Source of the DNA: Macrostomum lignano
Taxonomy: Eukaryota
NCBI GenBank assembly: GCA_002269645.1
Contig: NIVC01000221.1
Coordinates: 372,001-436,000 of the forward strand
DNA length: 64,000 nt
Direction: 5' to 3'
Part shown: piece after piece, positions 17,088-64,000 of the stretch
Position numbering within the stretch: position 1 is the stretch's first letter
How the letters are laid out: each line of letters starts with the position of its first letter
Notes under the pieces: model-generated
What the model saw: the letters and a program-made list of their open reading frames with translations, nothing else
Databases searched by the model: none
What the model was told of the DNA's origin: nothing
Position numbers and translations under genes: made by a program

Positions 17088-17175
17088 GAGGGGCGCATTG
17101 TCATGATAGAGCGAAACCAAGTCGAAAAGCACAAAAACACAACGCTTTTCTGGTATTCGGAGGAACCCAGGCCTT
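17088..17175 (-). mobile_element. Internally deleted mariner transposase remnant
   Basis: Minus strand gives PGFLR...LYHDNAP, matching two separated parts of the transposase at 58113-59084; duplicated at 62822-62915. Confidence 0.65.
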
Positions 17176-20559: not shown

Positions 20560-21010
20560 GAAGACGGTCCACCAGTCCGTCCTGTAGCGTGATCTTCCGT
20601 GAAGAAAGTAACTCAGCTCTCCCAGAGAAACTGGATGAGTCGTGGGATGCTGTCGGGCTGGCGGACCTCGATAATGGAGAGTTCAGCCTGAGGTAGCGTA
20701 GCCGGTCCCTGATAATGAAAACGGCATTTGACAGACAAAGTGCTGAACATATTCGGTGTCCGTAGGTCCTATTATATGGCCCTATGGGGCAGGAAACGAA
20801 TGCCGGCGTCAATTAGACGGTGGGAAATCTTGGAAGCTTTCCTGTGGACAAAGATCGTTTCCAGCAGGGGAATGTTGAGGAAGGCGTTGAGACCATCATA
20901 AGGAGCAGACGGGGGGGGGCGCTAATGATCATGCGGCATGCGCGCCCTTGCGTTCTCCTGAAAGTCTCTAGACAGGTCTTATCTGCAGGCGCTAGCTGAG
21001 ATCCACTATT
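20560..21010 (-). mobile_element. Decayed, internally deleted remnant of the LINE family at 51012-56743
   Basis: Reverse complement aligns by eye with 55345-55570 (GCTAGCGCCCTGCAGATAAAGACCTGTCTAGAG...) and with 56470-56625 (GACCGGCTACGCTACCTC...GGAAGATCACGCT). Confidence 0.85.
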
Positions 21011-21977
21011 ATCCTAAATAATTTAAAGTAATTCTTCAATAATTGTCGTTACAATTACCTTTACAGAACAACTGCAATATTTTTCAGTCGAAGGTGGACC
21101 CATTTGTCATAATAAACGACCACCCGAGCCCGTTACCTTCAGTTTGCACCCCACGACGCCTATAAATGTCGCTGAAAAATATGTGCTTCTACATTGCATC
21201 GAGGGATAACGACGTTATACAACGGCTAAATGTCTGTGTAATATAAAATGTTGTCCTCACTGCTAATTTGATGGTATGACAATTCTAGTTGCGTGATTGC
21301 ACTATGGTTTCTAAATCATTCTTTGTCGCTTTGTACATCTTTCATGTGAAACAATACTTAATTGTTAGTATTGTGAATGATATCATCGTGTGCAGTATCG
21401 TAACACCATTTTACATCTGATTTGAGCAATGTTTGACCGCCTAGTCACTAGCAGTAATGTCACAGAGGGACTACTAAATACTGAGTAACCCTTAGGTAAA
21501 GTAAACCGGCTTAATGAAGAGGTACTTTTTCGCACCCACCCCCTATAGCTAGCATCAAACTTCTATCGCCCCCTAGTAATTTTGAATTTTGAATTTGAGT
21601 CAATGCGCACATGCTTACGAGAGACTGAAATTTCAAGGATATTTTGATATGAACAGATGTTTTTGTTTTGTATAGCTCAGTTGCGTGTTTGGCTTGAGAG
21701 ATACACTGGTAATAAACAATCGGATCGCATTTGCGCTTAAACTACTCTTTATGTGAAGGTAAGAAATAGTAGTATATATGTCCCAAAAAGAAACTTACGA
21801 TTAAGCTTAAATTGAGCTAAACCAAATTCTACTAGATAGCGGTCGAAAAAGTTAATTCCAGTGTCAGTCCGATGTATTCCGTCTTAACAAACCATCGAGA
21901 GAGGATGTGTTCAGAATGTTTCCAATATTTCTTGACTTGATTTTCTAATAAAAAACAAGCAACAATCGTTTATTATA

Positions 21978-33140: not shown

Positions 33141-35069
33141 TCACTCAGGCTGCAATTCTCACTGCATGCTGGGTCTTTTCGATACATATCGGCCCAGACT
33201 CAAAGCCTGATTGCGTCTATTCTAATAGGCGAATGCGATTGCAATGTTAAATGTGCCATTTCTATCAATAATAATAATAATATCCTTTGCATACTACTGT
33301 CAGGCATTCAGGCTGCATTTGCGATCTGCTTCATTCTCTGTTGAATGCTCTGTCGAAATGTTTCAATTGTTTTAAATAAACTGAAGGTGCTCAGTTGGAG
33401 TGTTGAAAATCGACAAGAAAACAGCATTCGGTGGCGTTGGCTGCATTTTGTTAATTGAAACTGGTGAAATGCGGTGACAGCTTTGTATGATTACGATTAC
33501 CTGCAGTGAGTTTATAAAAGCTAATAAAATGCATGGCCTGACTGCATTTAGAACTCTGTGGCAGACCGGAAAAACCGTGGATTTGCCGCACACAGGAATC
33601 TATTTTTAGCCCCGACCGACCGAGGGGCTTTTTTGTTTGGTACAAAAAAAGCTCGAAACGCGGCCGGCGGGCTCTCGAATTCTCGGCTTCCCTGCGAAAT
33701 CTTCGTTTAGCTCTGGTTACGGGGGGGGGAATTATTTCATTTTCATTCCTCATTAACCTTTTATTTTTTCCTATCGCTCTAGTAATGAGTTTGCCCCAAT
33801 AATATAAAATATGAAGATCATATTGTCCTGAGGCAAATAAAGAATTATTTGGTTGCACATGCCTTACGTGATTGCTGCTGGAATATGATGTGTGCCTGTG
33901 TATCACAGCTGGCCTGTAGCAGCTCGTGTGTTTATCACATTTTTCAAAACCAATAAGTTGCTTATTGAACTTTGTTTACCTGTGCCCAAGTAGATTAACT
34001 GATTCGATTCGTTTGAGCCCTGGGGTTTTCAGGCGGTGGGAGTCGAGTTCACTGCTGCAGTATTATGGATTTTAACGCAACATCAACAGAATAAATATAA
34101 AATATAATATGAATAAAATATGTATGAATATAATATGTATGACAAGTCAATATTTGAAGCAAATCACTGACATCTCATCTCATTTCATCTGTACAAATGT
34201 GTCAGTGTGAGTCACATTGATTTACACACTGAGATGCAGCTGCCATCGCTCAGCCGCCATCAGGTTGCAAAAAGCCGGTCTCGCAACCGGCCGGAAAAGC
34301 CGGAAAGGCCGAAAAAGGCGGAAAAACTGTCTCTGAAAAGCCGGAGAAAGAATTTCAGCATGCAGTCAGGCCTCACTACGGCATTGTTTAAGCAATCGCA
34401 GAAGCTCGATCACAACCCACCTGCGAATCTGCCAGAGACCCGGCATGAGCTCTGCGTCCCAGGCCGCAACGATGGGGCTGCACGTGACTGTCGGGCTGCT
34501 GCTGCCAAACATGCGATGCTCGTCCGCTGCTGGCACCGCTGGGGTTCCGGAGTCGGAAGGCATTGCTGATTTGAGTCAAGAGAAAATCTCCAGATCTCCA
34601 GAAAATCTCCAGAAAATCTAATAAGATATGATGACACAGATATCCCGAACTGGAGCAGCTGAGACCCGCACTGGAGCAGCAGGGTCTTTTATTTATACAA
34701 ATTTCTGGATGGAGTGCTTATGTAGCCTTTTTATCAGTGCCGTATTATTCTTCTTGTCTTGTCTTGTCTTGTCTTGTCTAGCAAAACGCGTACACAGAGA
34801 AACTTGTACGTCAGTGTGAGTCACATTGATTTACACACTGAGATGCAGCTGCCATCGCTTGTACGTCAAGAAACTTGACGTCTTCAGCCACGGCGCAGCT
34901 AAAAAAATAGCTGGTTGGCCAGGCCGCAACTTTTCTAGCGGTGCTAAAAATAGAAAACTCTTTTTTTACCAGCTATTTCAAATCTTTTACATTGTACTGC
35001 TTGCAGTAATTCACTTATTCTGAAATAATATAATATAATAAAATATCTAATATATCTAATTCTGAGTCC

Positions 35070-41390: not shown

Positions 41391-43829
41391 AAGTTCGTGA
41401 ACTCTTCAAGCAAGTCCTTTGTGTGCCCTTGGTTGTTGTCCGTGATTAGGTGGCCACAACCGCTCCTGGAAACCTTCTGTCTAATCTGATCCTCAGGCCA
41501 CAAATATGGGGCTGCATGTGGCTGTCGGGCAGCTGCTGGAGCTGCTCGCTAACGTCGTCTGCTGCTGGCATTGCTGGCGTTCTGGACTCGAAGTCTTTGA
41601 CTTAGCTTGAGCCCATGCACAAAAATCGCAATCCGACTCCACAAAAATCACACTCAAACGCCACACCCATATCCCTCAGACACCACAAGCATCACCACAA
41701 GATCCACAGCGACTGTAAGTGTCCGATTGTGTGTGATAAGCAAAATTCAATGTGCGCAGCTCAAACAGTGCATAGGGTGGTTTTTCAAGTTCTGAGCAGT
41801 TGCTCAACGGCAGGGCCAATATTTCCAGCCAGCCAGGCTATTTGTACGCTATTTGTACGCTATTTGTAGCAAAAGCGTGAGAAAAACCGACTTTCTAATC
41901 ATCAGACATGTACACTCCCTGTGGCTTGTTGACTGACCAACTCCATGGCCAAGTTTTAAATTAATGTGACAGTCTACATGTCAGCTGTCTGTGTGACCAA
42001 AATCAAAGTTCGCGGTCTGAAATTGTAGAAAAATGACAAAAAAACTGCTGCTGAACCGCTCTCTGGAGTCATCCGCTGCTGCTGGCACCGCTCGGGTCCT
42101 GGACTCGGAGTCTGAGTCTGATCGGTAATTGTTGTTGATCACGAGAGTGGAGAGCACGAGCAAAACATCCTACCGCCCTGTACGGGCAACTTACGAGACA
42201 CGAGTATATTTGGAAAGCATTCGAAAAACTATTTAGAAGAGAAAAAGGTAAAAGAAGCGAAAGGAAAAAAATAAGTTGCAAAGATTGCGAGACAGGGGGG
42301 CTAAAAGCAAAAAAACGGACGCAAGCTGGCGAGGAGAGATAGGCTGAGGCGGGCACAACGCACGGGGCTAAAAAGGCCCCACAGACACCCACCCCCGCCC
42401 CGGCGGCGGCGCACCCACCCCCGGGCCAAGCACCCCAAAACACGGGCGACGCCAAGCCCCCCGGCCCCGCTAACAGCGATTGGCCAGCCAATCTACACTT
42501 CCTTGTTCATTAGCCTTTATATATGTGTTTATTTCGTCTTAGTAATTAATTTGCCACATATAAAATTACACAATATGGAAATCAGTAGTTAGCGGCCTGC
42601 CTAATTAATTATCAATAATAGGCAGAAGCAGAGAAGCAAACAGAAGGGAGAAGCCTAAATTGCTCTGACGCATGCAGTCATCAGTCGCATGTCCTGAAAC
42701 AACATTTGGAGCAACAGAAATCGATATGAAGGCTGCCAATCAGTGACATGTGCACCTTGCTTGTGCTCATTCTGTAATTCTATCTGAGCTCAATAAGCTG
42801 AGCTCAATAAGCTGTCCTGATAAACTGTTGCAGTACCTGGGCTTTTCATGTTAATTAAGAGTTCAATGTGCATGTGATGTGTGCCAGTGTATCACAGCTG
42901 GCCTGTAGCAGCTCATGTGTTTATCACATTTTTCAAAATCCAAAAGCTGCTTATTGAGCTCTGTTTACCTGTGCCAAGTAGATTAATTGATTTGATTCGG
43001 TTGATCTTTGATTTGAATTGATTTGGGGTTATCAGGCGGTGGGAGTCGAATACACTGCTGCAGTATTATGGATTTTAACGCATCATCGGCAGATTTAATA
43101 ACTGAATATAATATGTATGAAAAGTCAATATTTGAAGCAAATCACTGACATCTCATATCATTTCATCTGTATAAATGTGTCAGTGTGAGTCACATTGATT
43201 CACACACTGAGATGCAGCTGCCGCCATCAGGCTGCGAAGGTCTCTGAAAAGCCGGAGGAGCATGCAGTCAGGGCTGTTAGGCCTCACTAATGTTTAAGCA
43301 ATCACAGAAGCTCACAACCCACCAGCGAATCATGAACTCTGCGTCCCAGGCCGCAACAATGGGGCTGTACGTCGGGCTGCTGCTGAGCTTCTCGCTGACA
43401 TCGTCTGTTGCTGGCACCGCTGGGGTTCTGGAGTCAGAGTCTGACGGCATGGCTGATTTGAGATAGATCGAGCTTAATTTCGCGTGAGCAATTATAGATG
43501 GATAATGCTATAAATAATATATATAGCGGTGACGGCGGCCGCCGTGTCAGACTTTTCTTCTTTCTGAACCTGAAATGATCCTACACACGGCGAACAAGGC
43601 CTAACAGCAGCCTACAACAACAGAATGAGAATGCATTTCTCATTCTGTAGGATTCTCATTCACCCGAGCGAAGTGGCCCGGGTGGCACTGAGGCCGGGTG
43701 GCGGACAGACACAAGTCGACAATTGTGTGTGGACAATTTGTAGGAGTTTCCCGGGACTTTCCACGGCGCGCCGGCCTCAGTGTATGGTATGTTTCTGTTT
43801 TTCTGCTTTCTGTATCAATTTCTGTATCT

Positions 43830-47954: not shown

Positions 47955-49854
47955 TCACCCAGGCTGCAATTCTCACTGCATGCTGGGCCTTTTCGATACA
48001 TATCGGCCCGGACTCAAAGCCTGATTGCGTCTATTCTAATAGGCGAATGCGATTGCAATGTTAAATGTGCCATTTCTATCAATAATAATAATAATATCCT
48101 TTGCATACTACTGTCAGGTATTCAGGCTGCATTTGCGATCTGCTTCATTCTCAGTTGAATGCTCTGTCGAAATGTTTCAATTGTTTTAAATAAACTGAAG
48201 GTGCTCCGTTTGAGTCTTCAGAATCGACAAAAAACAGCATTTGCTGGCGTTGGCTGCATTTTGCTATTTGAGGCTGACAGAATGAGGTAACAGTTTCAAT
48301 AAATATGAGTAGCAAGGAGTAGTATGTTTGGAAAAACCGTGAATTTACCGCAGCTTTTGAATTGTACGCTGGTACGTTGTACGCAGATAATTTCTGTGGC
48401 TATTTTTAGCTACCGTGTACGTATATGAACGAGCGAACGTCTCCCCCGGGATTCTCTGAATTCTTCTCTCCCCAGAATTTAAACAAGACAAATTCTCGAG
48501 TTACTACTGTTCAGGCTACCAGAAGATTTATATTCACAAATGGAGATTCTATTCCTCATTAGCCGTTTGTATTTGTTTTTTAGTAATATCAATCTTTTAG
48601 TAATATCACGACAATATTTAATAATTAGTTTGCCACAGATAATATTATAAAATATGAAAATCAGCAGTTATCGGCCTGCGCATTAATTATTAATAAATAG
48701 GCCGAAGCAGAGAAGCAAACAGAAGGGAGAAGCCTAAATCGCTCTGACGCATGCAGTCAACAGTCGCATGTCCTGAAACAACATTTGAAGCAACAGAAAT
48801 CGATTTGAAGGCTGCCAATCAGTGACGTCACTTGTGCTCATTCTATAATTCTATCTGAGCTCAATCAAGGCTGATAAACTGTTGCAGTACCTGGGCTTTT
48901 CATGTTAATTAAGATGAAAATGTGCATGTGATGTGTGCCAGTGTATCACAGCTGTCCGGTAACAGCTCGTGTTTATCACGTTTTTCAAAATCAATAAGTT
49001 GCTTATTGAACTTTGTTTACCTGTGCCAAAGTAGATTAACTGATTCGATTCGGTTGAGCCCTGGGGTTTTCGGGCAGTGGGAGTCGAGTTCACTGCTGCA
49101 GTAATATGGATTTTAACGCAACATCAACAGAATAAATAACTGAATATAATATGTATGACAAGTCGATATTTGAAGCAAATCACGACATCTCATCTCATTT
49201 CTTCTGTACAAATGTGTCAATGTGAGTCACACACACATTGATTTACACAAATTGAGGTGCAGCTGCCATCGCTCAGCCAGCAGGTTGCGAAGGTCTCTGA
49301 AAAGCCGGATTTCAGAGAAAAAGAATTTCAGCATGCAGGGCTGTCAAGCCTCACTAATGCTTGAGAATCACAGAAGCTCAAAAACCAACCTGCGAATCTG
49401 CCATGAGCTCTGCGTCCCAGGCCGCAACGATGGGGCTGGAGGTGGCTGTCGGGCTGCTGCTGAGCTGCTCGCTGACGTCTGCTGCTGGCATTGCCACTTG
49501 ATTTGCGATGTGTCGAGAGAGATCGAGGGCCTGAATGCTTAAGCTTAAGCATTATCCAACACAATGACACAATGAATTTAGTCATATATTTAGTCATATA
49601 GCGATATACTATTTAGTACTTAGTACTGCAGTACTAAGTACTAAGTACTAAGTACTTAGTACTTAGTACTTTAGTACTTAGTACCTTTAGTACTGCAAAA
49701 ATAGTTTAGTAAAATCTCCGGTCTTTCCACGGTTTTGCCGGCGCAAAAAAGGGGCTTCTAGCAGTGCATTGTACTGTTTTTCTATTTTCAAATCTTTTAC
49801 ATTGTACTGCTTGCTGTAATTCACTTATTCTAATATTCTTTTAGCATTTTGAGT

Positions 49855-50440: not shown

Positions 50441-51011
50441 CACGTCTAATTGCTGGCATTATACAGCTGGGTGAAGTGAAGCAATGAGAAGTGTCTGGCT
50501 AAATGACACAAATTGTTCCAGCCCGACTCCGATGTAACCATGTTTTGCACGTGTACAGCGTACACGCCAGCAGCAGCCCGACAGTCACGTGCAGCCCCAT
50601 CGTAACGCAGTCCATGCCGGTCTCTGGCAGATTGGCAGGTGGGTTGTGAGCTTCTGTGGGCTTCTGTTGCTTAAAAATTACCGAAGTGAAGGCCTGACAG
50701 CCCTGACTGCATGCTGAAGTTCTTTCTCCAGCTTTTCAGAGAGAAGCGGCTGAGCGATTGCACCTGCATCTCAATTTGTGTCTCGGAGTCGGGCTGGAAC
50801 AATTTTTGTCATTTAGTAAGACATTAAATTGCTTCACTTCATTGCTGCATTGCTTCACTTCAGCCAGTTGTCACTCTCATACAACATACAACTTTGCTTG
50901 TATTAGATATGCCAAATATTGAGCTTACATTTATACGAGTACAAATCACTTAAATTCATTTCTTAATTCTGTTGATGTCGCGTTAAAAGCCAAAATACAC
51001 TCATATCGATG

Positions 51012-51260
51012 GCACGCGAAGGTGTATTCAGCACGCCAGTGAAGTATGAGACAGACCAGGCCTATGGGCTACGGTCTGCGATGCTTCACGCCTGCCCCTA
51101 TCTTCAGCAGGTCAAGGCTGGAGAGGGAGGTCTGCACCCGCTATTTGCCGCTGGCAGCCGCAGACCCCCCCTCACGCTGTTTCACAAGTCGACCCAGGGT
51201 ACTCGTCCCCGCGTGTGTTCAAGGCAGACCCTAGGGCTGCTGGACAGACTGGCCTCCGAC
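51012..51260 (+). ncRNA. HDV-like self-cleaving ribozyme at the LINE 5' end
   Basis: P1 GCACGCG (51012-18) / CGCGUGU (51210-16) with G1.U wobble; P3 GGG/CCC; L3 UACUCGU; P1.1 AC/GU; P4 hairpin and candidate J4/2 CAGA (51245-48); P2 imperfect. Confidence 0.7.
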
Positions 51261-51481
51261 GCTGGCGACCCATCCAGTGGCTTCGGCCGAATTTGGGTAT
51301 GCGGGTCTGGCTTGCCAGCCTGCAGGCCGTGGTACTGCTTAACGTACCCCCTAATGCCTAAGGTGTTTGACCGTGCCGATGGGCTGGAAGGCCGGGGGGT
51401 TGTCCGGTCGCTAGCGGTCTTTTTCTTTTTCTTCTTTCCTCTTTCTTTTGTGACTCAGCTCACTCCTTCCCGCTTTCAGCT

Positions 51482-52943
51482 ATGGCGTCATCCGCCTCTT
51501 TAACCCCCGCTGAAGCCGGGGCCCCGGCAACTCCGGCCGGTGACTCTGGCACGAGCGCCGCCCCACCGGGGGCAGATGGGCTTGCCGCCGGCTCGGCCGG
51601 TGACATGCCCGCACGCGCAACCGGGCCCTCCGCTGAAGCCCGACGCACCCGCAACCAACGCCGCAACGAGCGGCGACGGCGACTACGGGGTACTGCGGGC
51701 CGGCCACCGGCGGAGGGGGAACCTAGGGAGGGCGAGGCTGCTGTTGGGCCGAAAGGAACCACAGCAACCCCTGCCCCCCAGGATACAACCCCCGCTGGTG
51801 AGCCACCCAGTATACCTGCTACAAGCGCGGCCGGGCCTTCGGGAACCGCCGCCATCAACTACGCCTCAAAGGTCAAGCTCCAACCGGCGGTCATCGTCTT
51901 CGGGGAAGAGCAGGACCTCACGGCCGACGAGCTCGACAGTGCCTGGCGCACCATCGATGCTGCGCTCATCGACCAGCTCCTGGCGGGCCGCCCTGTGAGC
52001 GTGGTCAAGTCTGCCAAGACCGACGGCTGCATCTTCATCTGGTGCAGCTCGGAGGAGAGCAGCCGCAATCTACGCGAGCTTCTGCCAAAGCTGAACTGGC
52101 CCAAGAAGCTCGGCAAGCTCGTCTTCGCCAGCGAGGGCGAGCGACAGAAGACCCAGCGCTTTCGCGTCTGGATCCCGGCCGGCAGTGCCATTAAGTCCGG
52201 AGATCAGCTTAGGCAAATATTGCTAAAGCTGCACCCCGACCTTAAGGTCAACGGGCTCCTACACCACGCCACTTCCCGCAAGGAGAAGGGGGCTACGGTG
52301 ATCCTAGGGCTCTCTGATGACTGGGCTAAGCGCTTGCCGCCTAAGTCCACAATTCATATTGGTCTGACTCAGCTGACCATCCTCCGTTGCGAGGAGCGGA
52401 AAGCTGATGAAGCCAAGAATGCCAAAGCTTCCGAAACCGGAACTGGGGCCCAGGCTCCTCCGGCAAAGAAGCCGAGGCAAACGGCCGATCCTATGCCCGG
52501 TAAGGCAGTTCGCGCTGCTGAAACCGGAAATCGCAATCGCAGACCCGCCAGGAGCACCCGGAGGTCCGGCCTGATCCAGCGCGCGCTGGACCAGGCCAAG
52601 AACCTTCGTGCGCATCGTGAGCGGGCCCGCGCTTCTCGCGCTCCACCCCAACAGCCAGAAGGCCAGACTCTAAGCGGGGAGGCTCCGACCGACTGGTTCG
52701 AGTCTGTGACTCACCAGGAGGCTGGCGCCACCCGCATCGATCTGACCGACGAGGCAGAGGGGACGGGCAGTGACAGCACCGAAGCACGCAGGGGAGGCGA
52801 CGGTAACGTCCACGCTCACGTCCGCGGAGGACTCCACAGCCACCCTAACTGCTGAGGACGCTGAAACTCCCATGGAGGTCTGCGGGTCACCCACCACTGA
52901 AAAGGAGGAGGATGACCTGCTCAACGATTCCCCAACTGCGTGA
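51482..52943 (+). CDS. LINE ORF1 (gag-like; ORF track 51482-52855, probable 1-nt frameshift near 52790 extends it to TGA 52941-52943)
   Basis: Long open frame after the 5' UTR; central domain QRFRVWIP...LLKLHPDL...TVILGL resembles R1/LOA ORF1 regions; the alternative frame continues acidic, low-complexity sequence up to the ORF2 start. Confidence 0.75.
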
Positions 52944-52945
52944 TA

Positions 52946-55900
52946 ATGATCAGCAACCAGGGAATCCATTGCCTGCAGATTAATCTGCAGCACTGCGTCG
53001 CAGCCTCGGTCAACCTTATGCGTTACGCCGAGCTCGACAAGCCGGGGCTCATCCTCGTCCAGGAACCCTGGACTCTCAGAGGTAAGCCTCAAAACGCCCC
53101 TGCTGGCTACAATTGTTTTTATACTTACCCTCGCGAGGCCAACCAGCCTCCCAGAGCTTGCATCTTTGCGAGCAAAACGCTCAGTGCGTGGCTCAGATCG
53201 GACCTGTCCAACAGGGACATCTGCGTCATCCAATCCGAGGACCTTCTTCCTGGGAAGACCACCCTCATTGCCTCGGTTTACCTACCAGGCGATGCTGCGG
53301 TCGTCCCCAGAGCCCTCGCTACGCTGGTAGAGCTCTGCTCTGCCAAAAACTACGAGCTCATGGTTGCCGGCGACATCAACGCCCACCACACTCACTGGGG
53401 CAGCACTGGCATTAATCAGAGAGGCGAAGACCTCCTAGCCTACGTTGCCTCTACGACCCTCGAGTTCTGCAACTCTGGGTCCACCCCTACCTTTGACAAC
53501 GGACGGTGGTCGGAGGTGATCGACGCTACGCTCGCAACGCCCAGACTCTACCAGAGTATTGGGGCGTGGCGGGTGCTTCCAGTGTCCTCACTATCGGATC
53601 ACAAGTTCATCTCCTTCAACCTAATGGCCGCGCGTAGCGCAACTCGTGTTATGTGGAGACGGAACGCCAGAAATACGGATTGGGAAACCTTCGGGCTCGC
53701 CCTGAAGGAATTCCATCGGTCTCCTGGCCAACCATCCACGATCACGTCGTGCCGAGAGGCGGATGAGTGCGCGACTGTTTTGACAGAGACGCTAACCGCC
53801 GCCTTTGAGGCGTCCTGCCCTTTAAAAGCCTATAAAGGGAAAAAATCGGCGCCGTGGTGGAATCCCGAGCTCGGCAACCTCCGTCGCAGGGCTAAGAGAC
53901 TCCACCGCAGAGCAACTAAAACTAAGAGCCCTGCAGACCAAACCGCCTATCATGAAGCAATTCATGTGTTTAAAAGGCAGGTTAGGAATGCAAAGGCTCA
54001 AAAATGGCGACAATACTGTGAGGAGCTAGAGGGCTCACGCCCCACCTCCAGAGTTGTGAAAGCGCTCACGCTGGACAAAATGTCTAAGCTCTCCTCGGTC
54101 AAACGCACCGACGGTACGTCCACGGACAACCCAGGGGAAACGCTTGATGTAATGCTCACTGCGTTTTTCCCTAACGAGCCAGCTAACCAGACCACTCCGG
54201 ATCACTCGGAGGGAGGTCACGCGCTGGCTGCATCTATCATCACGGAGGACCGCATTGTGAGAGCGGCAAATTCCTTCAAGCCTTTCAAAGCCCCAGGACC
54301 AGACGGCATTGTACCGGCCCTTTTAAGAGAGGCGGTTAAATGCCCAGGCTTCCTGCGCAAACTTTGCAGCCTTCTTCGGGCATGCATCACGCTTGGTTAT
54401 GTCCCACAGGCATGGACCGAGGCAAAGGTGATCTTTATCCCTAAGCCATTCTATCAAATCCTTCAGACCGATCAGCTTGACCTCCTCCCTGGTCAAGCTG
54501 ATGGAGAGACTGGTGCTTTGGCGCCTTCTCTCTGTTGAGCTGAAGAACAAACCTCTCAGCGAGAACCAGCACGCTTTTCGGACGGGTCGCTCCACTGAAA
54601 GCGCGCTGCACGTCCTGGTCGATAAACTCGAGAAGGCCGTGCTTGGTAGTGGCTTTGCTCTGGGGATCTTCCTGGACATCATTGGCGCCTTCGATAACGT
54701 CCTCTTTGAGGCGTTCCGAAGAGCTCTTTGTGAGAGGCTAACGCACTCACATCTCACCAGATGGATCATGTACATGATCAGCCATCGCACGGCCACCGCC
54801 AGTCTGCTGGGCTACCAGAGGACGGTCCCCGTCTGCAAAGGTAGCCCGCAAGGTGGGGTGCTGTCTCCAGTTCTCTGGAATATGGTCATCGATGAGCTCC
54901 TCCGGGATGTTCGGCCTGACCCCATTCTGAAAGTTGGATATGCGGACGATGTCACCGCGGTGGCATCTGGTCCGTCCCCTGATACCCTCAGGGACCTTCT
55001 TCAGAACTTCATCTACGCTGCTGAGCAATGGGCGGACCGCTGTGGTTTAAGGCTCTCTGAGACTAAGACCGCAGCGATCATGTTCACCAGCAGGACCAAG
55101 TGGCAGATTCGGCCGCTCACGCTTTACGGAAGGGAAATCCCCTTCTGCAAGCAGACTAAATGTCTGGGTATTACCCTGGACCACAGGCTGAACTGGTCAC
55201 CCCACGTTCAAACAAAAGCCAAAAAGGCCTTCGCAGTCTTCGCGCAATTGCGCAGGGCTGTCGGTACCACCTGGGGGCTCACCCCCAAGCGCCTCTGGTG
55301 GATCTACACTGCAATGGTTAGGCCCGCTATCTCGTATGGCGGCCTGATCTGGGCTAGCGCCCTGCAGATAAAGACCTGTCTAGAGGCTCTCAGGAGAGCG
55401 CAAGGGCGCGCTTGTCGCACGATCATGAGCGCCCCTCCGTCTGCTCCTTACGATGGCCTCAACGCCTTCCTCAACATTCCTCCGCTGGACATCTTTGTCC
55501 GCAGGGAAGCGGCTAAGACTGCCCGCCGTCTAGCTGACGCTGGCATTCGAATCCAGCCCCATAGGGCCATGGCTAAGCGCAAGCTTCTGCCCCACGCTGA
55601 CCTCTGCCTCAAGGACTTGAGAGACAGCGGCGGGCTCCACGTCCTATCTGACGGCGAACCCCGCACTCTCAACCTCTTTCAGCGCTACAAGGTCACCATC
55701 CCCTCTAGGGATGCTGCCAATGACCACTGGAATTTCCAGGAGGTCCATTGCTACACGGACGGATCCATCAAAGACGGTCGCGCCGGCTTTGGGTCTGCAT
55801 CATCATCAACGGCCGCGTAATTGCCACGCATGCCCAGCACACTGGTAGACTCTCCACAGTCTTCCAGAACGAAGTCCTTGCCATCAGCTCTTGCGCTGCA

Positions 55901-56631
55901 GAGCTGAACGCCAAGGTTACGAGAGGAAAGACTATTGTCATCCACTCCGACAGCCAAGCGGCCTTACAGGCCCTTTGCCACACCACAACGAACTCCCGGA
56001 CAGTCGCCGACTGCGCCCGGCAGCTCAACCTCCTGGCCAGAAGCAATACTGTCAGGCTGAAGTGGATCCCAGGGCACGCAGGGTTTCCGGGGAACGAGCT
56101 GGCAGACACCCTCGCCAAGAGGGGCGGCTCTGGCTCTTTTTTCGGCCCTGCCCCCTGGTCCCTATGCCCTTGACAGTCATCAATCGTCAGATCGACGACT
56201 GGGCTGACTCCCTCCACAGGGACAGATGGGCGGGCACCCAAAACTGCCGGCAATCTCGTGCCGCGGTTCCTTGCCCGTCTCACAGGCTCAGAAACATCCT
56301 TCTGAACCAGAATCGGAAGGATATTCGAGCCCTTGTCATGACCCTTACCGGCCATGGCTACCTCGCCAGGCACTGCTTCCTCCGAGGCGACCTCGAGAGC
56401 GAAATTTGCCCCTTTTGCGAGTGCGACAATGAAGATGCTCAGCACTTTGTCTGTCACTGCCCTTTCTTTAACAGAGACCGGCTACGCTACCTCGGGCCGA
56501 ACCCGTCCATTGACGAGGTTTGCCAGCCCGACAGCATCCCACGGCTCATCCAGTTCCTTCGGGCGACTAGACGAGCCAGTTTCTTCCCAACGGAAGATCA
56601 CGCTGCAGGACGGACCGGCGGACCACCCTGA
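52946..56631 (+). CDS. LINE ORF2 pol: APE endonuclease, reverse transcriptase, RNase H, C-terminal Cys/His motif; 3 frame breaks (~54445, ~55795, ~56150)
   Basis: LQINLQH, LVQEPW, GDINAHH, SDH (APE); PGPDG, KSFRPISL, QGGVLSP, YADD (RT); YTDGS, E, HSDSQAAL, WIPGHAGFPGNELAD (RNase H); LTGH...CPFC...EDAQHFVCHCP. Confidence 0.92.
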
Positions 56632-56899
56632 CCGGCCCGACGCCTCTGCCTGTCTGCGGGCCTTCAGGGGCTAGCGGAATGGGCGACCCTCGCCTCCCCG
56701 CTGTGTCTACGGACCACCCTGCAGCTAAGTCAAGTCAAGTAAGACTCATATCGATGATGATGCTCTGCAGATGCTGCAAGTGAGAATTCGATATGCGTCT
56801 TAAAACACCACCGTTCAAACGAATCGAATCAAAATTATTCGAAAAATTAAACAGAAGTTTAGAGCAGCTTCTTGGCTTTGATCTCTTTGATCTCTTCCA

Positions 56900-57110
56900 G
56901 GGTTGTAGTCTAGTGATTAGAGCATCGGAGTCACGACTTGAAAGTTGGGTGTTCGATTTCCGATCCCTTGGAACAATTTGTGTCCTTGAGCGAGACACTG
57001 TAAACTCAGCATTCCTTCACTCCACTTTAGCTCATTTAGGTTCCAGCATTTAAATGGGTGCCAGCATTAGCTGGGGTAAATGAGGATGTGTGTGTGTGTG
57101 TGGCGACCCG
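56900..57110 (+). mobile_element. Degenerate tRNA-derived SINE with CORE-like central block
   Basis: A-box-like TAGTCTAGTGA, B-box-like GTGTTCGATTTCC, then GTGTCCTTGAGCGAGACACT and TAAATGGGTGCCAGC resembling CORE-type SINE bodies; ends in (GT)n; no TSD seen. Confidence 0.5.
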
Positions 57111-57674: not shown

Positions 57675-59084
57675 TCACTTTTCAACATAGTCGCCATCCT
57701 TCTCAGTGCAGCGTTGCCATCTCAACTGCCACTTGTTAAAGGCCTCAGCGTACAGGTTTGCGGTGGGGGCCGTAGCCCAGCGGTAGCGTAGCTGCTCTGG
57801 TGTGCCAGCGACCCAGGCTCGATTCCAAGTGCAGTCACATTAATTTGGGGCTGAATTGGAATCTCGGCTTGGCTCTGCTCGTGCAACTAACGGCCTTGAG
57901 AGCCAACCCCCCAATGCGCAGTGAAGTGTACATGCCTAACGATAATATAAAGTTAGGGCCGCTGTACACTCCTGTGTGAGTGTGTGCCTGCGTACGTATC
58001 CGCGCGCTTGTATGCCTGCTCAGGGGAGTCGGCGGAATGGGCAGTAATGCCTCTCGCCGGTTGTGTGCCTATGTCGCTTAAAGTGCGCCAGGGTGCTCAC
58101 AACCCCCTGCCTCTAATAAAAAAACAGGTTTGCGGCCATGGAGGCGGTGACCCCCTCCCATGCATTCTTCACCTCCTGAAAGGTGTCAAACCTTCGTGCA
58201 GCGATGCTGCTTCTGACATGCGGGAACAACCAGAAGTCCGCAGGTGCCAAATCAGGCGAATTTGGCGGGTGCGGAACCACCCGGATGCCTCTACTGGCCA
58301 GGAATTCCCTGGTGTGGCCCGACGCGTGAGGGGGCGCATTGTCATGATGGAGGAACCACCCAGCCTGCACCATGTTGGGCCTCTTTTGTCGAATTTGCTC
58401 AATCAAGGTGTCCAGCACGGAGCAGTAGTAGACACTGTTGACAGTCTGGGCTTGCGGGACGTGATGGGTGTGCACCAAGCCGTCCGAGTCGAAAAACACA
58501 ACAGCCATTGTTTTTCTGGTGCCCAGAGATACCTGGGACTTTGTTAGTGCCTTGGAATCCCGTTCGGCCCTCTGCCTGGACTGGTTCTCGGTCTCTGGTG
58601 TCACGTAGTGCAGCCAGGTTTCATCAGCCGTGATGATTCGCCGGAGGAAGCCAGGCTCCTGCCTCATCATCCGGAGGAACTCCTGGGCACAGCGGACCCG
58701 CTCCGCCCGGTTCTCAGCAGTGAGCAGGTGAGGGACCCACCTGGCAGACACATGCTTGAGATGGAGATCTTGCACTAGAATGTCATGGACAGTGGTCTTA
58801 GGGATCCCTGATTCATCTGCCAGCTCCCTGACGGTAAGGCGCCTGTCCTGCTGGATCAGCGCGGCCACGGTTTGGATGTTCGCGGAAGTCCGTACGGTTG
58901 GGTCCCGGTTCTTGCCGCGACCATCAGAGCCATCGTGACCAGATCGCAGTTGGCCGAAAATATGGTAAACTTGACTCCGCGACATGGCTTCATGCTGGTG
59001 GATGTCCTGCAGGTGCCGCATGCATTCTGCTGCAGACTTGCCAGCCTTGAAGAAGTCAACAACGATGTCTCGCTGGTTCGGCAT
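57675..59084 (-). mobile_element. Mariner (DD34D) transposase gene interrupted by a SINE; 345 aa when reconstructed
   Basis: WVPHLL, TADETW, HHDNAP-34 aa-D (NSPDLAPADFWLF); removing 57764-58123 plus one TSD copy restores MAANLYAEAFNKWQLRWQRCTEKDGDYVEK*; no intact TIR pair found. Confidence 0.92.
57764..58123 (+). mobile_element. tRNA-derived SINE, 360 bp, 12-bp TSD ACAGGTTTGCGG
   Basis: Head GGGGCCGTAGCCCAGCGG (A box) ... GGCTCGATTCC (B box); A-rich tail TAATAAAAAAA; TSD 57752-57763 and 58124-58135; other mariner copies carry a single site (13059-13070, 35223-35234). Confidence 0.9.
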
Positions 59085-61777: not shown

Positions 61778-63348
61778 GTATTACGCAGAGCTCGGGACTC
61801 AGAGTTTCACAACTTTCAGCGGCACTCCAACTTTTAACACCCATGAAAAGCCGCTATGACGCTCAGCTTCATGGAAAATGTCAGCCCAGTCCCTTCATGC
61901 AGGTGATGTGTCAGTGTATCACAATGTCCTGTAACAGTTTAAATTAAAAATTTTTTTTTCAAAACCAAGACACTGCTTAGAACTTTTGTTTAATTTTTCT
62001 CGCTTGATAAGTCGATTAATCGATTTGATTCGTTTGAACTGTGGGGTTTTCTGACGCATGTCGAATTCCCACGTGCAGCATCTGCAGTGCGTCATCATCG
62101 ATATGAGTGTATTTTGGCTTTTAACGCGACCTCAACAAAATTAATAACTGAATTTAAGATGTGATTTGTATAATTGTAAGCTTAATATTTGGCACCTCAT
62201 CCAATACAAGCAAAGTTGTATGTTGAGTGTGAGTAACACTGATTCACACATTGAGACGCAGCTGCCATCGCTCAGCCGCTTCTCTCTGAAAAGCCGCAGA
62301 AAGAACTTCAGCATGCAGTCAGGGCTGTCAGGCCTCACTTCAGTTTTTTTAGCAGTCAACAGAAGCTCACGACCCACCTGCGAATCTGCCAGAGACCGGC
62401 ATGAGCTCTGCCAGAGACCGGCCGCAACGAGGATCGGGCTGTACGTGGCAGTGGTGCTGCTCGCTGACGTCTGGACTCTGAGTCAGAAGGCATGGCTGAA
62501 TTGAGTCTTCTGTCTTAGTCTGTCTTTCATTTACAGTGTTGCATTTAGTAGTGCTTATCAAAGCAGCACACACACTCAGAAGGAGAGGATCCATTCCTAC
62601 AAAATTAGGACTGTGGAGTTCCCGAGTTCTCGTTTATTTTGAGCGGGTGTTTTCCGCTATGTCCGGATCTGAAGGTGGGTTAAAAATAGATTTTTCTCTC
62701 GGAATTCCAGTCCTTATTCAACTGCCCTGCCCAAACCTCGCAAGAGAATGTGACTGTACTTGGGTAGGTGTACAAAGAATTCGATGTCTAAGTCTCTGCA
62801 AAGCCCGAAAAGCCCAACCCCGACACCTGAGGGGCGCATTGTCATGATAGAGCGAAACCAAGTCGAAAAGCACAAAAACACAACGCTTTTCTGGTATTCG
62901 GAGGCACCCAGGCCTTTGTTGGCATTCCGTTCTAATAGAGTTTAATAAAATAGATTAGTAACGAATAACTGAATATGCTTTGTGAAGATCAATTTAAATT
63001 GGTCGTGAAGCCGCTGATGGTCTCTCATTTTATAAAAGAAAATTTATTCAACATGACAGCGCAACACAGGCTGGTTGGGTGCAGAGAAACAAAAGCGTTA
63101 GAAGACTCGTTTCTGACTGGCTCACAGCTTCCTTAGCAACGGCATGGCAACCTGAAAAATTCAGCTAAGCTACGCGCAGTTTGGTTATACTGAGTGGGAA
63201 TTGGCCAATAGCAAAAGACAATTTTTAAGACGGCAAGTCTGCCTTTTCAAAGCAAAGATAAAAACTGCACAATGGACTCTTTCCCGGGCTCAGTCTCCGA
63301 CTGTTTCCCCCAACATCCACGCTTTCACTCTGAATAATCCAGACAGAA

Positions 63349-63523
63349 ATGTTTTCACAAAGCTTTGCTGTCATTTACTTGCTGATGTGGGCGGTGTTCG
63401 GAAGCTGCTTGACTTCGGTGCCGCCTCATCCGATGGCATTCCGCTACATCGGTTGCTTCGTGGATAAAAGGGACCCCGACATGACTGGCATGATTGGAGT
63501 CTCTGCATTCGGCCCATATTCAA
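63349..63523 (+). pseudogene. Truncated WSC gene 5' end fused to a LINE remnant
   Basis: MFSQSFAVIYLLMWAVFGSCLTSVPPHPMAFRYIGCFVDKRDPDMTGMIGVSAFGPYS, then a switch to sequence matching 20628 onward. Confidence 0.85.
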
Positions 63524-63905
63524 ACTGGATGAGTCTTGGGATGCTGTTTGGCTGGCGGACCTCGATAATGGAGAGTTCAGCCTGAGGTAGCGTAGCCGGT
63601 CCCTGATAAAGAAAACGGCATTTGACAGACAAAGTGCTGAACATATTCGTTGTCCGTAGGTCCTATTATATGGCCCTATGGGGCAGGAAACGAATGCCGG
63701 CGTCAATTAGACGGCGGGAAATCTTGGAAGCTTTCCTGTGGACAAAGATCGTTTCCAGCAGGGGAATGTTGAGGAAGGCATTGAGACCATCATAAGGAGC
63801 AGACGGGGGGCGCTAATGATCATGCGGCATGCGCGCCCTTGCGTTCTCCTGAGAGTCTCTAGACAGGTCTTATCTGCAGGGCGCTAGCTCAGATCCACCA
63901 TTATC
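63524..63905 (-). mobile_element. Duplicate of the decayed LINE remnant at 20560-21010
   Basis: Near-identical to 20630-21010. Confidence 0.85.
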
Positions 63906-64000
63906 CTAAATAATTTAAAGTAATTCTTCAATAATTGTCGTTACAATTACCTTTACAGAACAACTGCAATATTTTTCAGTTGAAGGTGGACCCATTTGTC

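What the first reader, a model, noticed from the sequence alone, without database searches (positions are those of the whole stretch)
51012..51300. HDV-like ribozyme whose cleavage site coincides exactly with the LINE 5' boundary
Seen in sequence: the first base after the TSD (G51012) opens a 7-bp P1, GCACGCG/CGCGUGU (51210-16), with the hallmark G1.U wobble. It is preceded by P3 GGG/CCC enclosing the 7-nt L3 UACUCGU. P1.1 uses an unusual A-U + C-G pair (L3 AC with GU at 51217-18), which looks like compensatory change from the usual CC/GG. The ~170-nt J1/2 is packed with stems (GTGAAGTAT/ATGCTTCAC, CAGACC/GGTCTG, GGTCTGC/GCAGACC, GAGGG/CCCTC). Two options exist for the 3' half: a short P4 (51219-44), J4/2 CAGA(C) and an imperfect P2 (51188-96 with 51250-60); or a long P4, CGAA at 51288-91 and ACCCA/UGGGU. 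Established: HDV-like ribozymes process the 5' ends of R2, RTE, L1Tc and some LOA/R1-type elements. Inference: this element makes its 5' end by self-cleavage from host read-through transcripts, so it would need no promoter of its own.
Basis: partly seen in the sequence, partly recalled or inferred. Interest (0 to 1): 0.85.

Follow-up and report, generated by a model that had tools for sequence, protein, structure and literature searches.

The report
Self-cleaving ribozyme at a LINE's start
The first ~250 bases of this jumping gene (a LINE retrotransposon) fold like a hepatitis-delta-type self-cutting RNA whose predicted cut site is exactly the element's first base, and relatives from other samples keep the same fold through matching base changes, so it is a convincing new example of a known trick rather than a new principle.

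Summary

- **The element.** A 5,732-bp non-LTR retrotransposon occupies 51012-56743. It has a 13-bp target-site duplication, and an uninterrupted paralogue of the target lies at 62012-62238.
- **The 5' half.** Base 1 (G51012) opens a 7-bp P1 with 51210-16. That strand directly follows P3 GGG/CCC and L3 UACUCGU.
- **Chance.** This 5'-half arrangement anchored at base 1 occurred in 0 of 20,000 shuffles of the 5' UTR. Without any rule on the L3 sequence it occurred in 110 of 20,000.
- **Relatives.** The 5' UTRs of L001, L089 and L091 fold the same way. L089 shares only 37% ORF1 identity, and its contig starts at the homologous base with a different but complementary P1 (GCCUGC/GCAGGC).
- **Covariation.** Across the window, L089 and L001, 7 of 22 pairs in P1, P1.1 and P2 changed on both sides and stayed paired. 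No shuffle reached this.
- **The 3' half.** The second option (C51288, ACCCA/UGGGU) is contradicted.
- **J1/2.** The 169-nt J1/2 is a closed three-arm domain.

Cleavage itself and independence from a promoter are untested. This copy has a broken ORF2 and a weak P2. It is a new member of a known kind.

The parts
50999..51011 (.). 5' copy of the 13-bp target-site duplication ACTCATATCGATG
   Evidence: Direct repeat with 56744-56756. It is present once in the empty-site paralogue at 62012-62238.
51012..51018 (+). P1 5' strand GCACGCG. The predicted cleavage is 5' of G51012, the first base of the element.
   Evidence: Forms 7 bp with 51210-16, with G1.U. L089 has GCCUGC at its base 1, pairing with GCAGGC in the same register; two pairs changed on both sides. 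0 of 20,000 shuffles reproduce P1 at base 1 plus the core.
51019..51187 (+). J1/2 peripheral domain, 169 nt. It is closed by a P1.2-like helix (51022-24/51183-85, 51026/51182, 51029-32/51176-79). Arm 1 is 51035-51118, with a nested arm 2 at 51090-95/51107-12. Arm 3 is 51121-51173.
   Evidence: Folded alone: -70.9 kcal/mol, z = -3.6 against mononucleotide shuffles, and closing pairs with probability about 0.9. L089 closes its J1/2 with a different 9-bp helix, GCAGGGCGC/GCGCUCUGC. Arm 3 is kept in L001 with different helix sequences: window GGUCUGC/GCAGACC, L001 GAUGCG/CGCAUC. Arm 1 (51035-89) is 80% identical to L089.
51188..51196 (+). P2 5' strand: outer GUCG (51188-91), A51192 and C51193 unpaired, inner CCA (51194-96) adjoining P3
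   Evidence: Pairs with 51250-52 and 51257-60. The relatives have GCCG-A-CCCAAA, GCCG-C-CUCAGA and GUCG-A-CCUCAGA, each with a matching 3' strand; three pairs changed on both sides.
51197..51209 (+). P3 GGG / L3 UACUCGU / P3' CCC
   Evidence: Invariant GGG/CCC and a 7-nt L3 with U at position 1 and G at position 6 in all four sequences. These two residues are the conserved L3 U and G described for HDV-like ribozymes (PMC3774820).
51210..51216 (+). P1 3' strand CGCGUGU
51217..51218 (+). P1.1 strand GU, pairing with C51202 and A51201 of L3
   Evidence: Window AC/GU; L089 CU/AG, with both pairs changed on both sides; L001 and L091 keep only the C-G pair.
51223..51241 (+). P4 hairpin: GGCAG-A-CC, loop CUAG, GG-CUGCU
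   Evidence: L001 has a perfect 8-bp version. L089 (CGCCCGGCC/GGCCGGGCG) and L091 (UGCAGCU/AGCUGCA) have unrelated hairpins at the same place.
51242..51249 (+). J4/2 GGACAGAC, with the candidate catalytic C51245
   Evidence: A C lies 3 nt before P2' in L001 (C143), L089 (C228) and L091 (C148), and 4 nt before it here. Its catalytic role is inferred, not tested.
51250..51260 (+). P2 3' strand: UGG (inner), CCUC internal loop, CGAC (outer). This is the 3' end of the ribozyme.
51261..51299 (+). Conserved stem-loop just after the ribozyme: ACCCA 51268-72 with UGGGU 51294-98, enclosing GGC-UUCG-GCC. It is not part of the core.
   Evidence: The local pairing is kept in all relatives, while their P2 5' strands can no longer pair with UGGGU.
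51482..52855 (+). ORF1 (457 aa; no Pfam or PDB match)
   Evidence: Relatives: P0001 and P0014 (74-81% identity), L089 and L091 (36-37%).
52940..56631 (+). ORF2: apurinic-type endonuclease, reverse transcriptase, RNase H and a C-terminal Cys/His motif. It is broken by at least three frame changes, at about 54447, 55511-55820 and 56125-56167.
   Evidence: Pfam hits; tblastn against intact relatives
56726..56743 (+). 3' tail of short repeats: TAAG-TCAAG-TCAAG-TAAG
   Evidence: Read directly
56744..56756 (.). 3' copy of the target-site duplication
62012..62238 (-). Paralogous empty site: the same host repeat without the LINE
   Evidence: It aligns across the joined flanks with one copy of the 13-mer.

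Best explanation
Bases 51012-51260 encode a large (about 249-nt) HDV-like self-cleaving ribozyme. It forms the 5' end of a non-LTR retrotransposon that carries an apurinic-type endonuclease, a reverse transcriptase and RNase H.

How it would work:
1. In a transcript that starts upstream of the element, the first 7 nt pair with 51210-16 to form P1.
2. The 169-nt J1/2 folds into a closed three-arm domain. Its closing helix (P1.2) holds P1 next to P2.
3. P2-P3 and P1-P1.1-P4 form the nested double pseudoknot.
4. A cytosine in J4/2 (C51245) catalyses scission 5' of G51012. This leaves the element RNA with a 5'-OH at its own first base.
5. Reverse transcription of that RNA to its end gives insertions whose 5' boundary is the cleavage site. 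That is what is seen here.

What is shown and what is inferred:
- Shown: the fold, its conservation by compensatory change, and the coincidence with the 5' end in two lineages.
- Inferred: catalysis, the identity of the catalytic C, co-transcription from host promoters, and any role in translation.

This particular copy is a dead insertion. Its ORF2 is frame-shifted, its inner P2 is only 3 bp, and its J4/2 is one base longer than in relatives. It may no longer cleave well.
For: - Boundary: 13-bp duplication and a paralogous empty site.
- All core helices are present.
- The 5'-half descriptor matches once in 128 kb, at this site. With P1 anchored at base 1 it matches 0 of 20,000 shuffles, and 110 of 20,000 without any L3 rule.
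- L089 is a full-length relative with intact ORFs, 37% ORF1 and 57% endonuclease-region identity. It starts at the homologous base with GCCUGC, which pairs with the GCAGGC right after its P3'.
- On the 3-sequence alignment, 94.5% of cells are paired and 7 of 22 pairs changed on both sides (P1 2, P1.1 2, P2 3). 0 of 500 shuffles reach this. Slid controls give 35-47% paired and 0-1 such pairs.
- P4 is a different hairpin in each lineage at the same position. P3 and the U and G of L3 are invariant. A C lies 3 nt before P2' in three relatives.
- The J1/2 of both the window and L089 folds as a closed domain with a P1.2 helix. This architecture is described for large HDV-like ribozymes (PMC4908430). 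J1/2 loops of 216-498 nt are known in active silkmoth R2 ribozymes (PMC3774820).
- Energy: the nested part plus P1 (-106.8 plus -10.4) equals the best pseudoknot-free fold (-116.4).
Against: - There is no biochemical evidence.
- No Rfam family matches the window or the compact L001, even at E <= 10.
- J4/2 lacks the adenines usual after the catalytic C (own knowledge of the family). In this copy it is one base longer.
- The window's inner P2 is only 3 bp.
- In the window and L001, P1' can also pair with J4/2 in a long hairpin (51204-61) that excludes P1. 13 of 13 pairs are kept, two of them changed on both sides. A neutral simulation gives at least two such pairs in 38% of two-sequence trials, and the register is not kept in L089 or L091.
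- The contigs of L001 and L091 start inside J1/2, so their P1 5' strands are unseen.
- Only one insertion with a target-site duplication was available.
Confidence: 0.8

Rival explanations
1. The region is a conserved, structured 5' UTR without catalysis, serving for example as an internal promoter, a protein-binding site or a ribosome-entry element. The long hairpin 51204-51261, the J1/2 arms and the downstream stem-loop would be the real structures. The complementarity of the 5' end to 51210-16 would be incidental.
For: - RNAalifold on the window and L001 prefers the long hairpin. 13 of 13 pairs are kept, including two changed on both sides at exactly the positions where P1' differs.
- There are no Rfam hits.
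- Arm 1 and the blocks further downstream are conserved in sequence, which a ribozyme core alone does not require.
Against: - The hairpin's covariation is not significant for two sequences, and its register is not kept in L089 or L091.
- It leaves the invariant GGG and L3 unexplained.
- It does not explain why two lineages with different terminal sequences each have a first 6-7 nt complementary to the strand right after P3'.
Confidence: 0.1
2. The ribozyme is real but uses the reader's second 3' half: a long, multi-hairpin P4 domain, catalytic C51288 in CGAA, and P2 = ACCCA 51192-96 with UGGGU 51294-98.
For: - In the window this P2 is 5 contiguous bp and appears in the constrained minimum-energy fold.
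- C-N-A-A is present in the window and in L001.
- The block 51261-99 is well conserved between the window and L001.
Against: - In L089 and L091 the strand next to P3 is CUCAGA. It cannot pair with the downstream (C/U)GGGU but pairs perfectly with UCUGAG after the short P4.
- UGGGU has a conserved local partner, ACCCA, in all four sequences.
- L091 has no C-N-A-A at that place.
- There is no helix closing the proposed long P4.
Confidence: 0.03
3. The working P1 5' strand is a proximal one just upstream of P2, as L001's GCUCGC (76-81) suggests. The distal match at the window's first base would be chance, and the 5' leader would normally be cut off.
For: L001's GCUCGC pairs 6 of 6 with its own P1' GCGAGC, 2 nt before P2, which gives a compact canonical fold.
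Against: - The homologous window segment (UUUCAC) does not pair with its P1'.
- The same CUCGCAAG is kept in L091, whose P1' (GUGGGU) is not complementary to it.
- In the window and in L089 this segment is the 3' strand of P1.2.
- Sequence upstream of it is shared by all lineages, so it is copied during retrotransposition.
- The window and L089 both begin at the distal P1.
Confidence: 0.04

Closest known systems
R2 retrotransposon HDV-like ribozymes (Drosophila; silkmoths with J1/2 of 216-498 nt) - PMC3774820
   Same: - Double-pseudoknot fold at the element's 5' end that releases the element RNA from a co-transcript.
- P1 of 6-7 bp, a 3-bp P3 and an L3 with conserved U and G.
- A variable P4.
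- A very long J1/2 that can be needed for activity.
- Cleavage sites that shift when P1 changes.
   Different: - R2 is a single-ORF, site-specific element of 28S rDNA with a restriction-like endonuclease, and it often cleaves inside the 28S sequence.
- This element has two ORFs, an apurinic-type endonuclease and RNase H. It inserted into a dispersed repeat and is predicted to cleave exactly at its own first base.
- Its P1.1 is A-U/C-G, and J4/2 lacks the usual adenines.
drz-Agam-2 family (mosquito RTE elements) and other large HDV-like ribozymes with a P1.2 peripheral domain - PMC4908430
   Same: A structured J1/2 whose closing helix brings P1 and P2 together (the 'pinch').
   Different: - Here the J1/2 domain is 169 nt with three arms.
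- One arm is more conserved in sequence (80%) than the ribozyme core or the proteins.
- The LINE clade differs.
HDV-like ribozymes at the exact 5' end of Baggins1 (LOA clade), R4/Dong, RTE and L1Tc/ingi elements - PMC3774820, PMC3185411, PMC4035085, PMC6765202
   Same: Elements with an apurinic-type endonuclease whose first nucleotide is the ribozyme's +1 nucleotide. The proposed role is release from read-through transcripts and possibly cap-independent translation.
   Different: - L1Tc's ribozyme is 77 nt and doubles as an internal promoter.
- This one is about 249 nt.
- The clade of the present element was not determined.
Twister-variant ribozymes of Schistosoma mansoni non-LTR retrotransposons - PMC8501958
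   Same: A self-cleaving RNA with a reported function in non-LTR retrotransposition, in an invertebrate.
   Different: A different catalytic fold. No twister, hammerhead or other Rfam ribozyme model matches here.

Membership tests
HDV-like self-cleaving ribozymes | Nested double pseudoknot with strand order P1 - J1/2 - P2 - P3 - L3 - P3' - P1' - P1.1 - P4 - J4/2 - P2' | tested here: met
   All strands are present in this order in the window, L001, L089 and L091. 94.5% of cells are paired on the 3-sequence alignment.
HDV-like self-cleaving ribozymes | Helices supported by compensatory base changes among relatives | tested here: met
   7 of 22 pairs changed on both sides (P1 2, P1.1 2, P2 3). 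0 of 500 shuffles reach this, and slid controls give 0-1. P4 has a different sequence in three lineages. Only 3-4 sequences were available.
HDV-like self-cleaving ribozymes | Cleavage site 5' of the first nucleotide of P1; G at +1, usually in a G.U wobble | tested here: met
   G51012.U51216 in the window; G1-C in L089. This is a match at the sequence level only.
HDV-like self-cleaving ribozymes | 3-bp P3 closed by an L3 of about 7 nt with a conserved U and G (reverse wobble), followed directly by P1' | tested here: met
   GGG / U-N-N-N-C-G-U / CCC in all four sequences. The feature is described in PMC3774820.
HDV-like self-cleaving ribozymes | P1.1: one or two pairs between L3 and the nucleotides after P1' | tested here: met
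   Window AC/GU and L089 CU/AG have two pairs, both covarying. L001 and L091 have one pair, C-G. One- or two-pair P1.1 is mentioned in PMC4908430.
HDV-like self-cleaving ribozymes | P2 of at least 5 bp stacking on P3 | tested here: inconclusive
   The relatives have 6-7 bp plus 4 bp. The window copy has only 3 bp next to P3, then a 2x4 internal loop and 4 bp.
HDV-like self-cleaving ribozymes | Catalytic cytosine in single-stranded J4/2 just before P2' | tested here: inconclusive
   A C lies 3 nt before P2' in L001, L089 and L091 and 4 nt before it in the window (C51245). The adenines usual after it are absent. Its function is untested.
HDV-like self-cleaving ribozymes | Mg2+-dependent self-scission giving a 2',3'-cyclic phosphate and a 5'-OH | not testable with these tools
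   This needs in vitro transcription and cleavage assays.
HDV-like self-cleaving ribozymes | Match to a curated Rfam HDV-like model (not a defining feature, but the usual filing route) | tested here: not met
   No HDV-type hit at the gathering score or at E <= 10 in window 50800-51600 or L001 1-330. Covariance models cannot encode the pseudoknots (own knowledge), and the 169-nt J1/2 is unlikely to be accommodated.
Non-LTR retrotransposons whose 5' end is made by a ribozyme (R2, R4/Dong, Baggins, RTE, L1Tc type) | The ribozyme's +1 nucleotide is the first nucleotide of full-length copies | tested here: met
   In the window this follows from the target-site duplication and the empty site. The L089 contig starts at the homologous base. 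Only one insertion with a target-site duplication was available.
Non-LTR retrotransposons whose 5' end is made by a ribozyme (R2, R4/Dong, Baggins, RTE, L1Tc type) | Transcription by read-through from host promoters; no promoter of its own | not testable with these tools
   No expression data are available, and the promoter scan on offer is for bacterial promoters only.
Non-LTR retrotransposon with apurinic-type endonuclease, reverse transcriptase and RNase H (I/LOA/R1/Tad/ingi-like group) | Domain order endonuclease - RT - RNase H - C-terminal Cys/His motif, a separate ORF1, a target-site duplication and a 3' tail of short repeats | tested here: met
   Pfam PF14529/PF03372, PF00078 and PF00075; the ORF layout; the tail and the duplication. 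Placement in a named clade by RT phylogeny was not done, because no reference set was at hand.

The most novel reading that the evidence does not exclude
The J1/2 domain may be a functional module built into the ribozyme instead of a passive spacer. Arm 1 (51035-51089) is 80% identical in sequence between lineages whose ORF1 proteins are only 37% identical. That makes it more conserved than the catalytic core (63%).

It could be a peripheral activator that docks on the core, or a binding site for the element's proteins or for the ribosome on the uncapped cleaved RNA. In addition, the segment next to the P1 5' strand resembles P1' in both lineages, so it could hide P1 until the whole domain has been transcribed.

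If so, this would define a distinct 'extended' class of HDV-like ribozymes, shared by a so far undescribed group of RNase-H-bearing LINEs found in several unrelated samples.
Probability: 0.3. Interest if true: 0.65.

Novelty: new member of a known kind. Interest (0 to 1): 0.5.

Why it matters
HDV-like ribozymes at LINE 5' ends explain how elements without promoters obtain a precise 5' end. They may also explain how such elements get translated without a cap. Documented cases are still few and are centred on R2, RTE, Baggins and L1Tc.

This case adds a family with several useful properties:
- The fold, the cleavage-site/boundary coincidence and the covariation can all be read from sequence.
- The family occurs in several independent samples.
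- Its very large, partly sequence-conserved J1/2 offers a natural system to test how peripheral domains control HDV-type catalysis.
- No Rfam model detects it, so an alignment built from these sequences would help annotation.

Tried and rejected
- **Rfam.** Nothing of HDV type at the gathering score on the whole window, or at E <= 10 on window 50800-51600 and L001 1-330.
- **Pattern scans of public collections.**
  - The metagenome scan with a DNA pattern for the core found 0 stretches, and the collection does not hold L001.
  - The metagenome scan with ORF1 peptide patterns found no relative.
  - The viral and prokaryotic genome scans gave only chance matches that lack the core.
- **Word-indexed protein searches.** They gave one close ORF1 relative and a few distant ORF2 relatives. 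A profile search returned nothing. Only the exhaustive representative search led to the informative loci L089 and L091.
- **Uninformative loci.**
  - L017, L018 and L019 are distant families (about 29-33% identity over the endonuclease region). No HDV-like core is recognisable in L017 or L018, and L019 starts inside ORF1.
  - L016, L088 and L090 start downstream of the ribozyme.
Rejected on L089 and L091.
- **L001's proximal P1 as a general cleavage site.** Rejected on L091.
- **'GATGGCAC' shared by the start of L001 and the window's 5' junction.** This is probably chance. Local alignment gives p about 0.03 before correction for three tests. L001 is collinear with the interior of J1/2, where arm 3 is kept with a different helix sequence.
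- **A duplication of the P1' region at the 5' end as the source of the complementarity.** Not significant, p = 0.24.
- **Covariation from the window and L001 alone.** A neutral simulation shows that two sequences are not enough.
- **Host organism.** Not identified. One relative protein is from the flatworm Macrostomum lignano. One relative contig is from a Namib salt-pan metagenome.
Full report
**What is there**

The finding lies at the 5' end of a non-LTR retrotransposon.
- ORF1 runs from 51482 to 52855 (457 aa, no Pfam or PDB match).
- It is followed by pieces of an ORF2 with an apurinic-type endonuclease (PF14529/PF03372), a reverse transcriptase (PF00078), RNase H (PF00075) and a C-terminal Cys/His motif.
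- Compared with intact relatives, the reading frame changes at about 54447, between 55511 and 55820, and at about 56125-56167. This copy is therefore defective.
- The element ends in TAAG-TCAAG-TCAAG-TAAG at 56743.

**The boundary**

ACTCATATCGATG flanks the element at 50999-51011 and 56744-56756. The window also holds an uninterrupted paralogue of the target. The stretch 62012-62238, read on the minus strand, aligns across the joined flanks and carries the 13-mer once. The insertion is thus exactly 51012-56743, and G51012 is its first base. A 9-bp duplication with 4 nt of GATG microhomology cannot be formally told apart from the 13-bp reading.

All of them exist.
- P1: GCACGCG with CGCGUGU, with G1.U.
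- P3: GGG/CCC around L3 UACUCGU.
- P1.1: A51201-U51218 and C51202-G51217.
- P4: a hairpin at 51223-41.
- Both candidate P2 partners are present.
- The four listed J1/2 stems are all in the minimum-energy fold of J1/2.

**Is it more than chance?**

I used a generic 5'-half descriptor. Its rules are G at +1, a 7-bp P1 with at most one G.U, a 3-bp G+C-rich P3, an L3 of 6-8 nt of the form U.C..G., P1' directly after P3', and then a G.
- It hits once in both strands of the window, at this site.
- With a J1/2 of up to 260 nt allowed, the motif is not rare. Shuffled windows give 0.25 hits on average and shuffled elements 0.0175.
- The telling point is the anchor. With P1 required to begin at the element's first base, 0 of 20,000 dinucleotide-preserving shuffles of the 5' UTR match.
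- With every L3 sequence rule dropped, 110 of 20,000 match.

**Relatives**

Close relatives were hard to find. Word-indexed protein searches gave one ORF1 relative, P0001. Its contig is L001, from a JGI metagenome, about 75-79% identical in DNA. A cluster mate, L016, starts downstream of the ribozyme. Pattern and peptide scans of the metagenome, viral and prokaryotic collections found nothing real.

The exhaustive search with the ORF1 core then led to two loci from the read set ERR14788467.
- L089 is a 6.5-kb contig with an intact ORF1 and a 1,232-residue ORF2 carrying endonuclease, RT and RNase H domains.
- L091 is a second, different family.
- Both are only 36-37% identical to the window in ORF1. 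L089 is 57% identical in the endonuclease region.
- Their 5' UTRs are nevertheless clearly homologous to the window's.

**The comparative test**

All four sequences can be written as the same string of elements: P2 outer, a bulge, P2 inner, GGG, a 7-nt L3, CCC, P1', P1.1, 3-6 nt, a P4 hairpin, a 7-8-nt J4/2, P2' inner, a spacer of 0-4 nt, and P2' outer (verified as contiguous substrings).
- **P3 and L3.** P3 and the U (position 1) and G (position 6) of L3 never vary. These are the L3 residues described as conserved in HDV-like ribozymes (PMC3774820).
- **P4.** It is GGCAGACC/GGUCUGCC in L001, a bulged version of the same in the window, CGCCCGGCC/GGCCGGGCG in L089 and UGCAGCU/AGCUGCA in L091.
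- **Inner P2.** It is CCA/UGG, CCCAAA/UUUGGG, CUCAGA/UCUGAG and CCUCAGA/UCUGAGG.
- **Outer P2.** It is GUCG/CGAC, GCCG/CGGC, GCCG/CGGC and GUCG/CGGC.
- **P1.1.** It is AC/GU in the window and CU/AG in L089.
- **P1.** The L089 contig starts, at the base homologous to G51012 (column 1 of alignment A5), with GCCUGC. This is the exact complement of the GCAGGC that follows its P3'. The prediction was fixed in advance and had no positional freedom, so the chance of a 6-nt Watson-Crick match is about 1 in 4,096.
- **Formal count.** On the 3-sequence alignment, 94.5% of cells are paired. 7 of 22 pairs changed on both sides and stayed paired (P1 2, P1.1 2, P2 3). 0 of 500 shuffles reach this. Sliding the partners by 1-3 columns gives 35-47% paired and 0-1 such pairs.

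**Which 3' half**

In L089 and L091 the strand next to P3 has changed to CUCAGA. It pairs with UCUGAG, which lies 3 nt after a conserved C that follows the short P4. It cannot pair with the downstream (C/U)GGGU. That downstream strand has a conserved local partner, ACCCA (51268-72 in the window), and forms a separate stem-loop after the ribozyme.

The ribozyme therefore ends at 51260, and the candidate catalytic base is C51245. The C-N-A-A at 51288-91 is not kept in L091.

The window copy is the weakest of the four. Its inner P2 is only 3 bp, and there are 4 nt rather than 3 between the C and P2'.

**J1/2**

The 169 nt between P1 and P2 fold alone into a closed domain (-70.9 kcal/mol, z = -3.6). 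The closing helix is 51022-32 with 51176-85, with pair probabilities of about 0.9. It leaves 3 nt to P1 and 2 nt to P2.

L089 has the same layout with a different 9-bp closing helix, GCAGGGCGC/GCGCUCUGC. Arm 3 is kept in L001 with a different helix sequence.

This is the 'pinch' architecture shown to accelerate large HDV-like ribozymes (PMC4908430). J1/2 loops of 216-498 nt occur in active silkmoth R2 ribozymes, where part of the loop is required for activity (PMC3774820).

Energetically, the nested part plus P1 (-106.8 plus -10.4 kcal/mol) equals the best pseudoknot-free fold (-116.4).

Arm 1 (51035-89) is 80% identical between the window and L089. That is more than the core (63%) and far more than the proteins would suggest. 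This points to an added, sequence-specific role.

**What speaks against, and loose ends**

- **Rfam.** No Rfam model matches. Covariance models cannot represent the pseudoknots (own knowledge), so this weighs little.
- **Alternative hairpin.** RNAalifold on the window and L001 prefers a long hairpin (51204-61) in which P1' pairs with J4/2. 13 of 13 pairs are kept, and two are changed on both sides.
  - A neutral simulation shows that such counts arise in 38% of two-sequence trials.
  - The register is not kept in L089 or L091.
  - It may still be an alternative conformer.
- **L001's proximal strand.** L001 has a proximal GCUCGC that pairs 6 of 6 with its own P1'. The same CUCGCAAG is kept in L091, where it is not complementary. 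In the window and L089 this segment is the 3' strand of P1.2.
- **Unseen strands.** The contigs of L001 and L091 start inside J1/2, so their distal P1 strands are unseen. The model predicts GCUCGCG for L001.
- **J4/2.** It lacks the adenines usual in this family (own knowledge).

**Mechanism and standing**

The best-supported reading is a large HDV-like ribozyme that cuts the element RNA out of longer transcripts at its own first base. The boundary of this insertion and the start of L089 are the footprints of that cut.
- Shown here: the fold, its covariation, and the coincidence with the 5' end in two lineages.
- Inferred: catalysis, the identity of the catalytic C, read-through transcription without a promoter, and any role in translation of the uncapped RNA.

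Ribozymes of this fold at the exact 5' end are already documented for R2, R4/Dong, Baggins, RTE and L1Tc (PMC3774820, PMC3185411, PMC6765202). This is therefore a new member of a known kind. It has unusual details: its size, the conserved J1/2 arm, the A-U/C-G P1.1, and a J4/2 without adenines. The element's clade and its host were not determined.

I did not compare it letter by letter with the HDV viral ribozymes (see the referred step). All comparison with HDV rests on published descriptions.

Noticed in passing
window 62012-62238 (-); also 1460-1820, 7014-7388, 9335-9708, 34330-34504, 43063-43331, 49101-49463: The LINE inserted into a copy of a dispersed host repeat that has about ten copies in the window. 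The copy at 62012-62238 serves as the empty site.
   Followed up: partly
window 16332-17783 ~ 62039-63523 (93%); 20628-21108 ~ 63522-64000 (97%): A large duplicated block, interrupted in one copy by about 2.8 kb. On the minus strand it carries two pieces that are 81-86% identical to LINE 55346-55570 and 56425-56624, with the 855 nt between them missing. This may be an internally deleted relative of the LINE.
   Followed up: partly
window 58113-59084 (-): An ORF with Tc1/mariner-type transposase domains (PF01359, DDE_3, HTH_Tnp_Tc3_2).
   Followed up: no
window ~56900-56975 (+): A tRNA-like stretch (…GTCTAGTGATTAGAGCATCGG…GGTGTTCGATTTCCGATCCC…) about 150 bp after the LINE's 3' duplication. ARAGORN and Rfam call no tRNA. 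It may be a SINE head or a decayed tRNA.
   Followed up: no
window 51013, 51032, 51087, 51173 (+): CACGC, the complement of the P1' core GCGUG, occurs four times in the 176 nt upstream of P2, against 18 times in the whole 5.7-kb element. GCACGC at 51031-36 could form a 6-bp alternative P1 with a G.U. These may be relics of earlier P1 strands or decoys.
   Followed up: partly
window 51204-51261 (+); L001 102-160: An alternative long hairpin in which P1' and P1.1 pair with J4/2 (G51217 with C51245). It is kept in L001, with two pairs changed on both sides, and it excludes P1. It may be an inactive or post-cleavage conformer.
   Followed up: partly
window 51022-51030 vs 51213-51221; L089 11-16 vs 189-194: In both lineages the segment just after the P1 5' strand resembles P1' (GUGUAUUCA/GUGUGUUCA in the window; GCAGGG/GCAGGC in L089). 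It could form a local hairpin that hides the P1 5' strand. In the window alone the similarity is not significant (p = 0.24).
   Followed up: partly
window 51035-51089 (+); L089 ~29-84: Arm 1 of J1/2 is 80% identical between lineages whose ORF1 proteins are 37% identical. It is the best-conserved part of the 5' UTR.
   Followed up: partly
window 51390-51419 and 51420-51449 (+): A further conserved block of the 5' UTR (GGCCGGGGGGTTGTCCGGTCGCTAGCGGTC) is shared with L001, L016 and L091 and partly with L089 and L090. It is followed in the window by a 30-nt pyrimidine tract just before the ORF1 AUG.
   Followed up: no
L090 1-200: The 5' UTR of this relative (Logan SRR28338163) carries a tandem duplication of about 100 nt in the region downstream of the ribozyme.
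   Followed up: no
L001 76-81 / 109-114: GCUCGC lies 2 nt upstream of P2 and pairs perfectly with L001's own P1'. This would give a compact ribozyme cutting about 75 nt inside the contig. It is not supported as a general feature by L091.
   Followed up: yes
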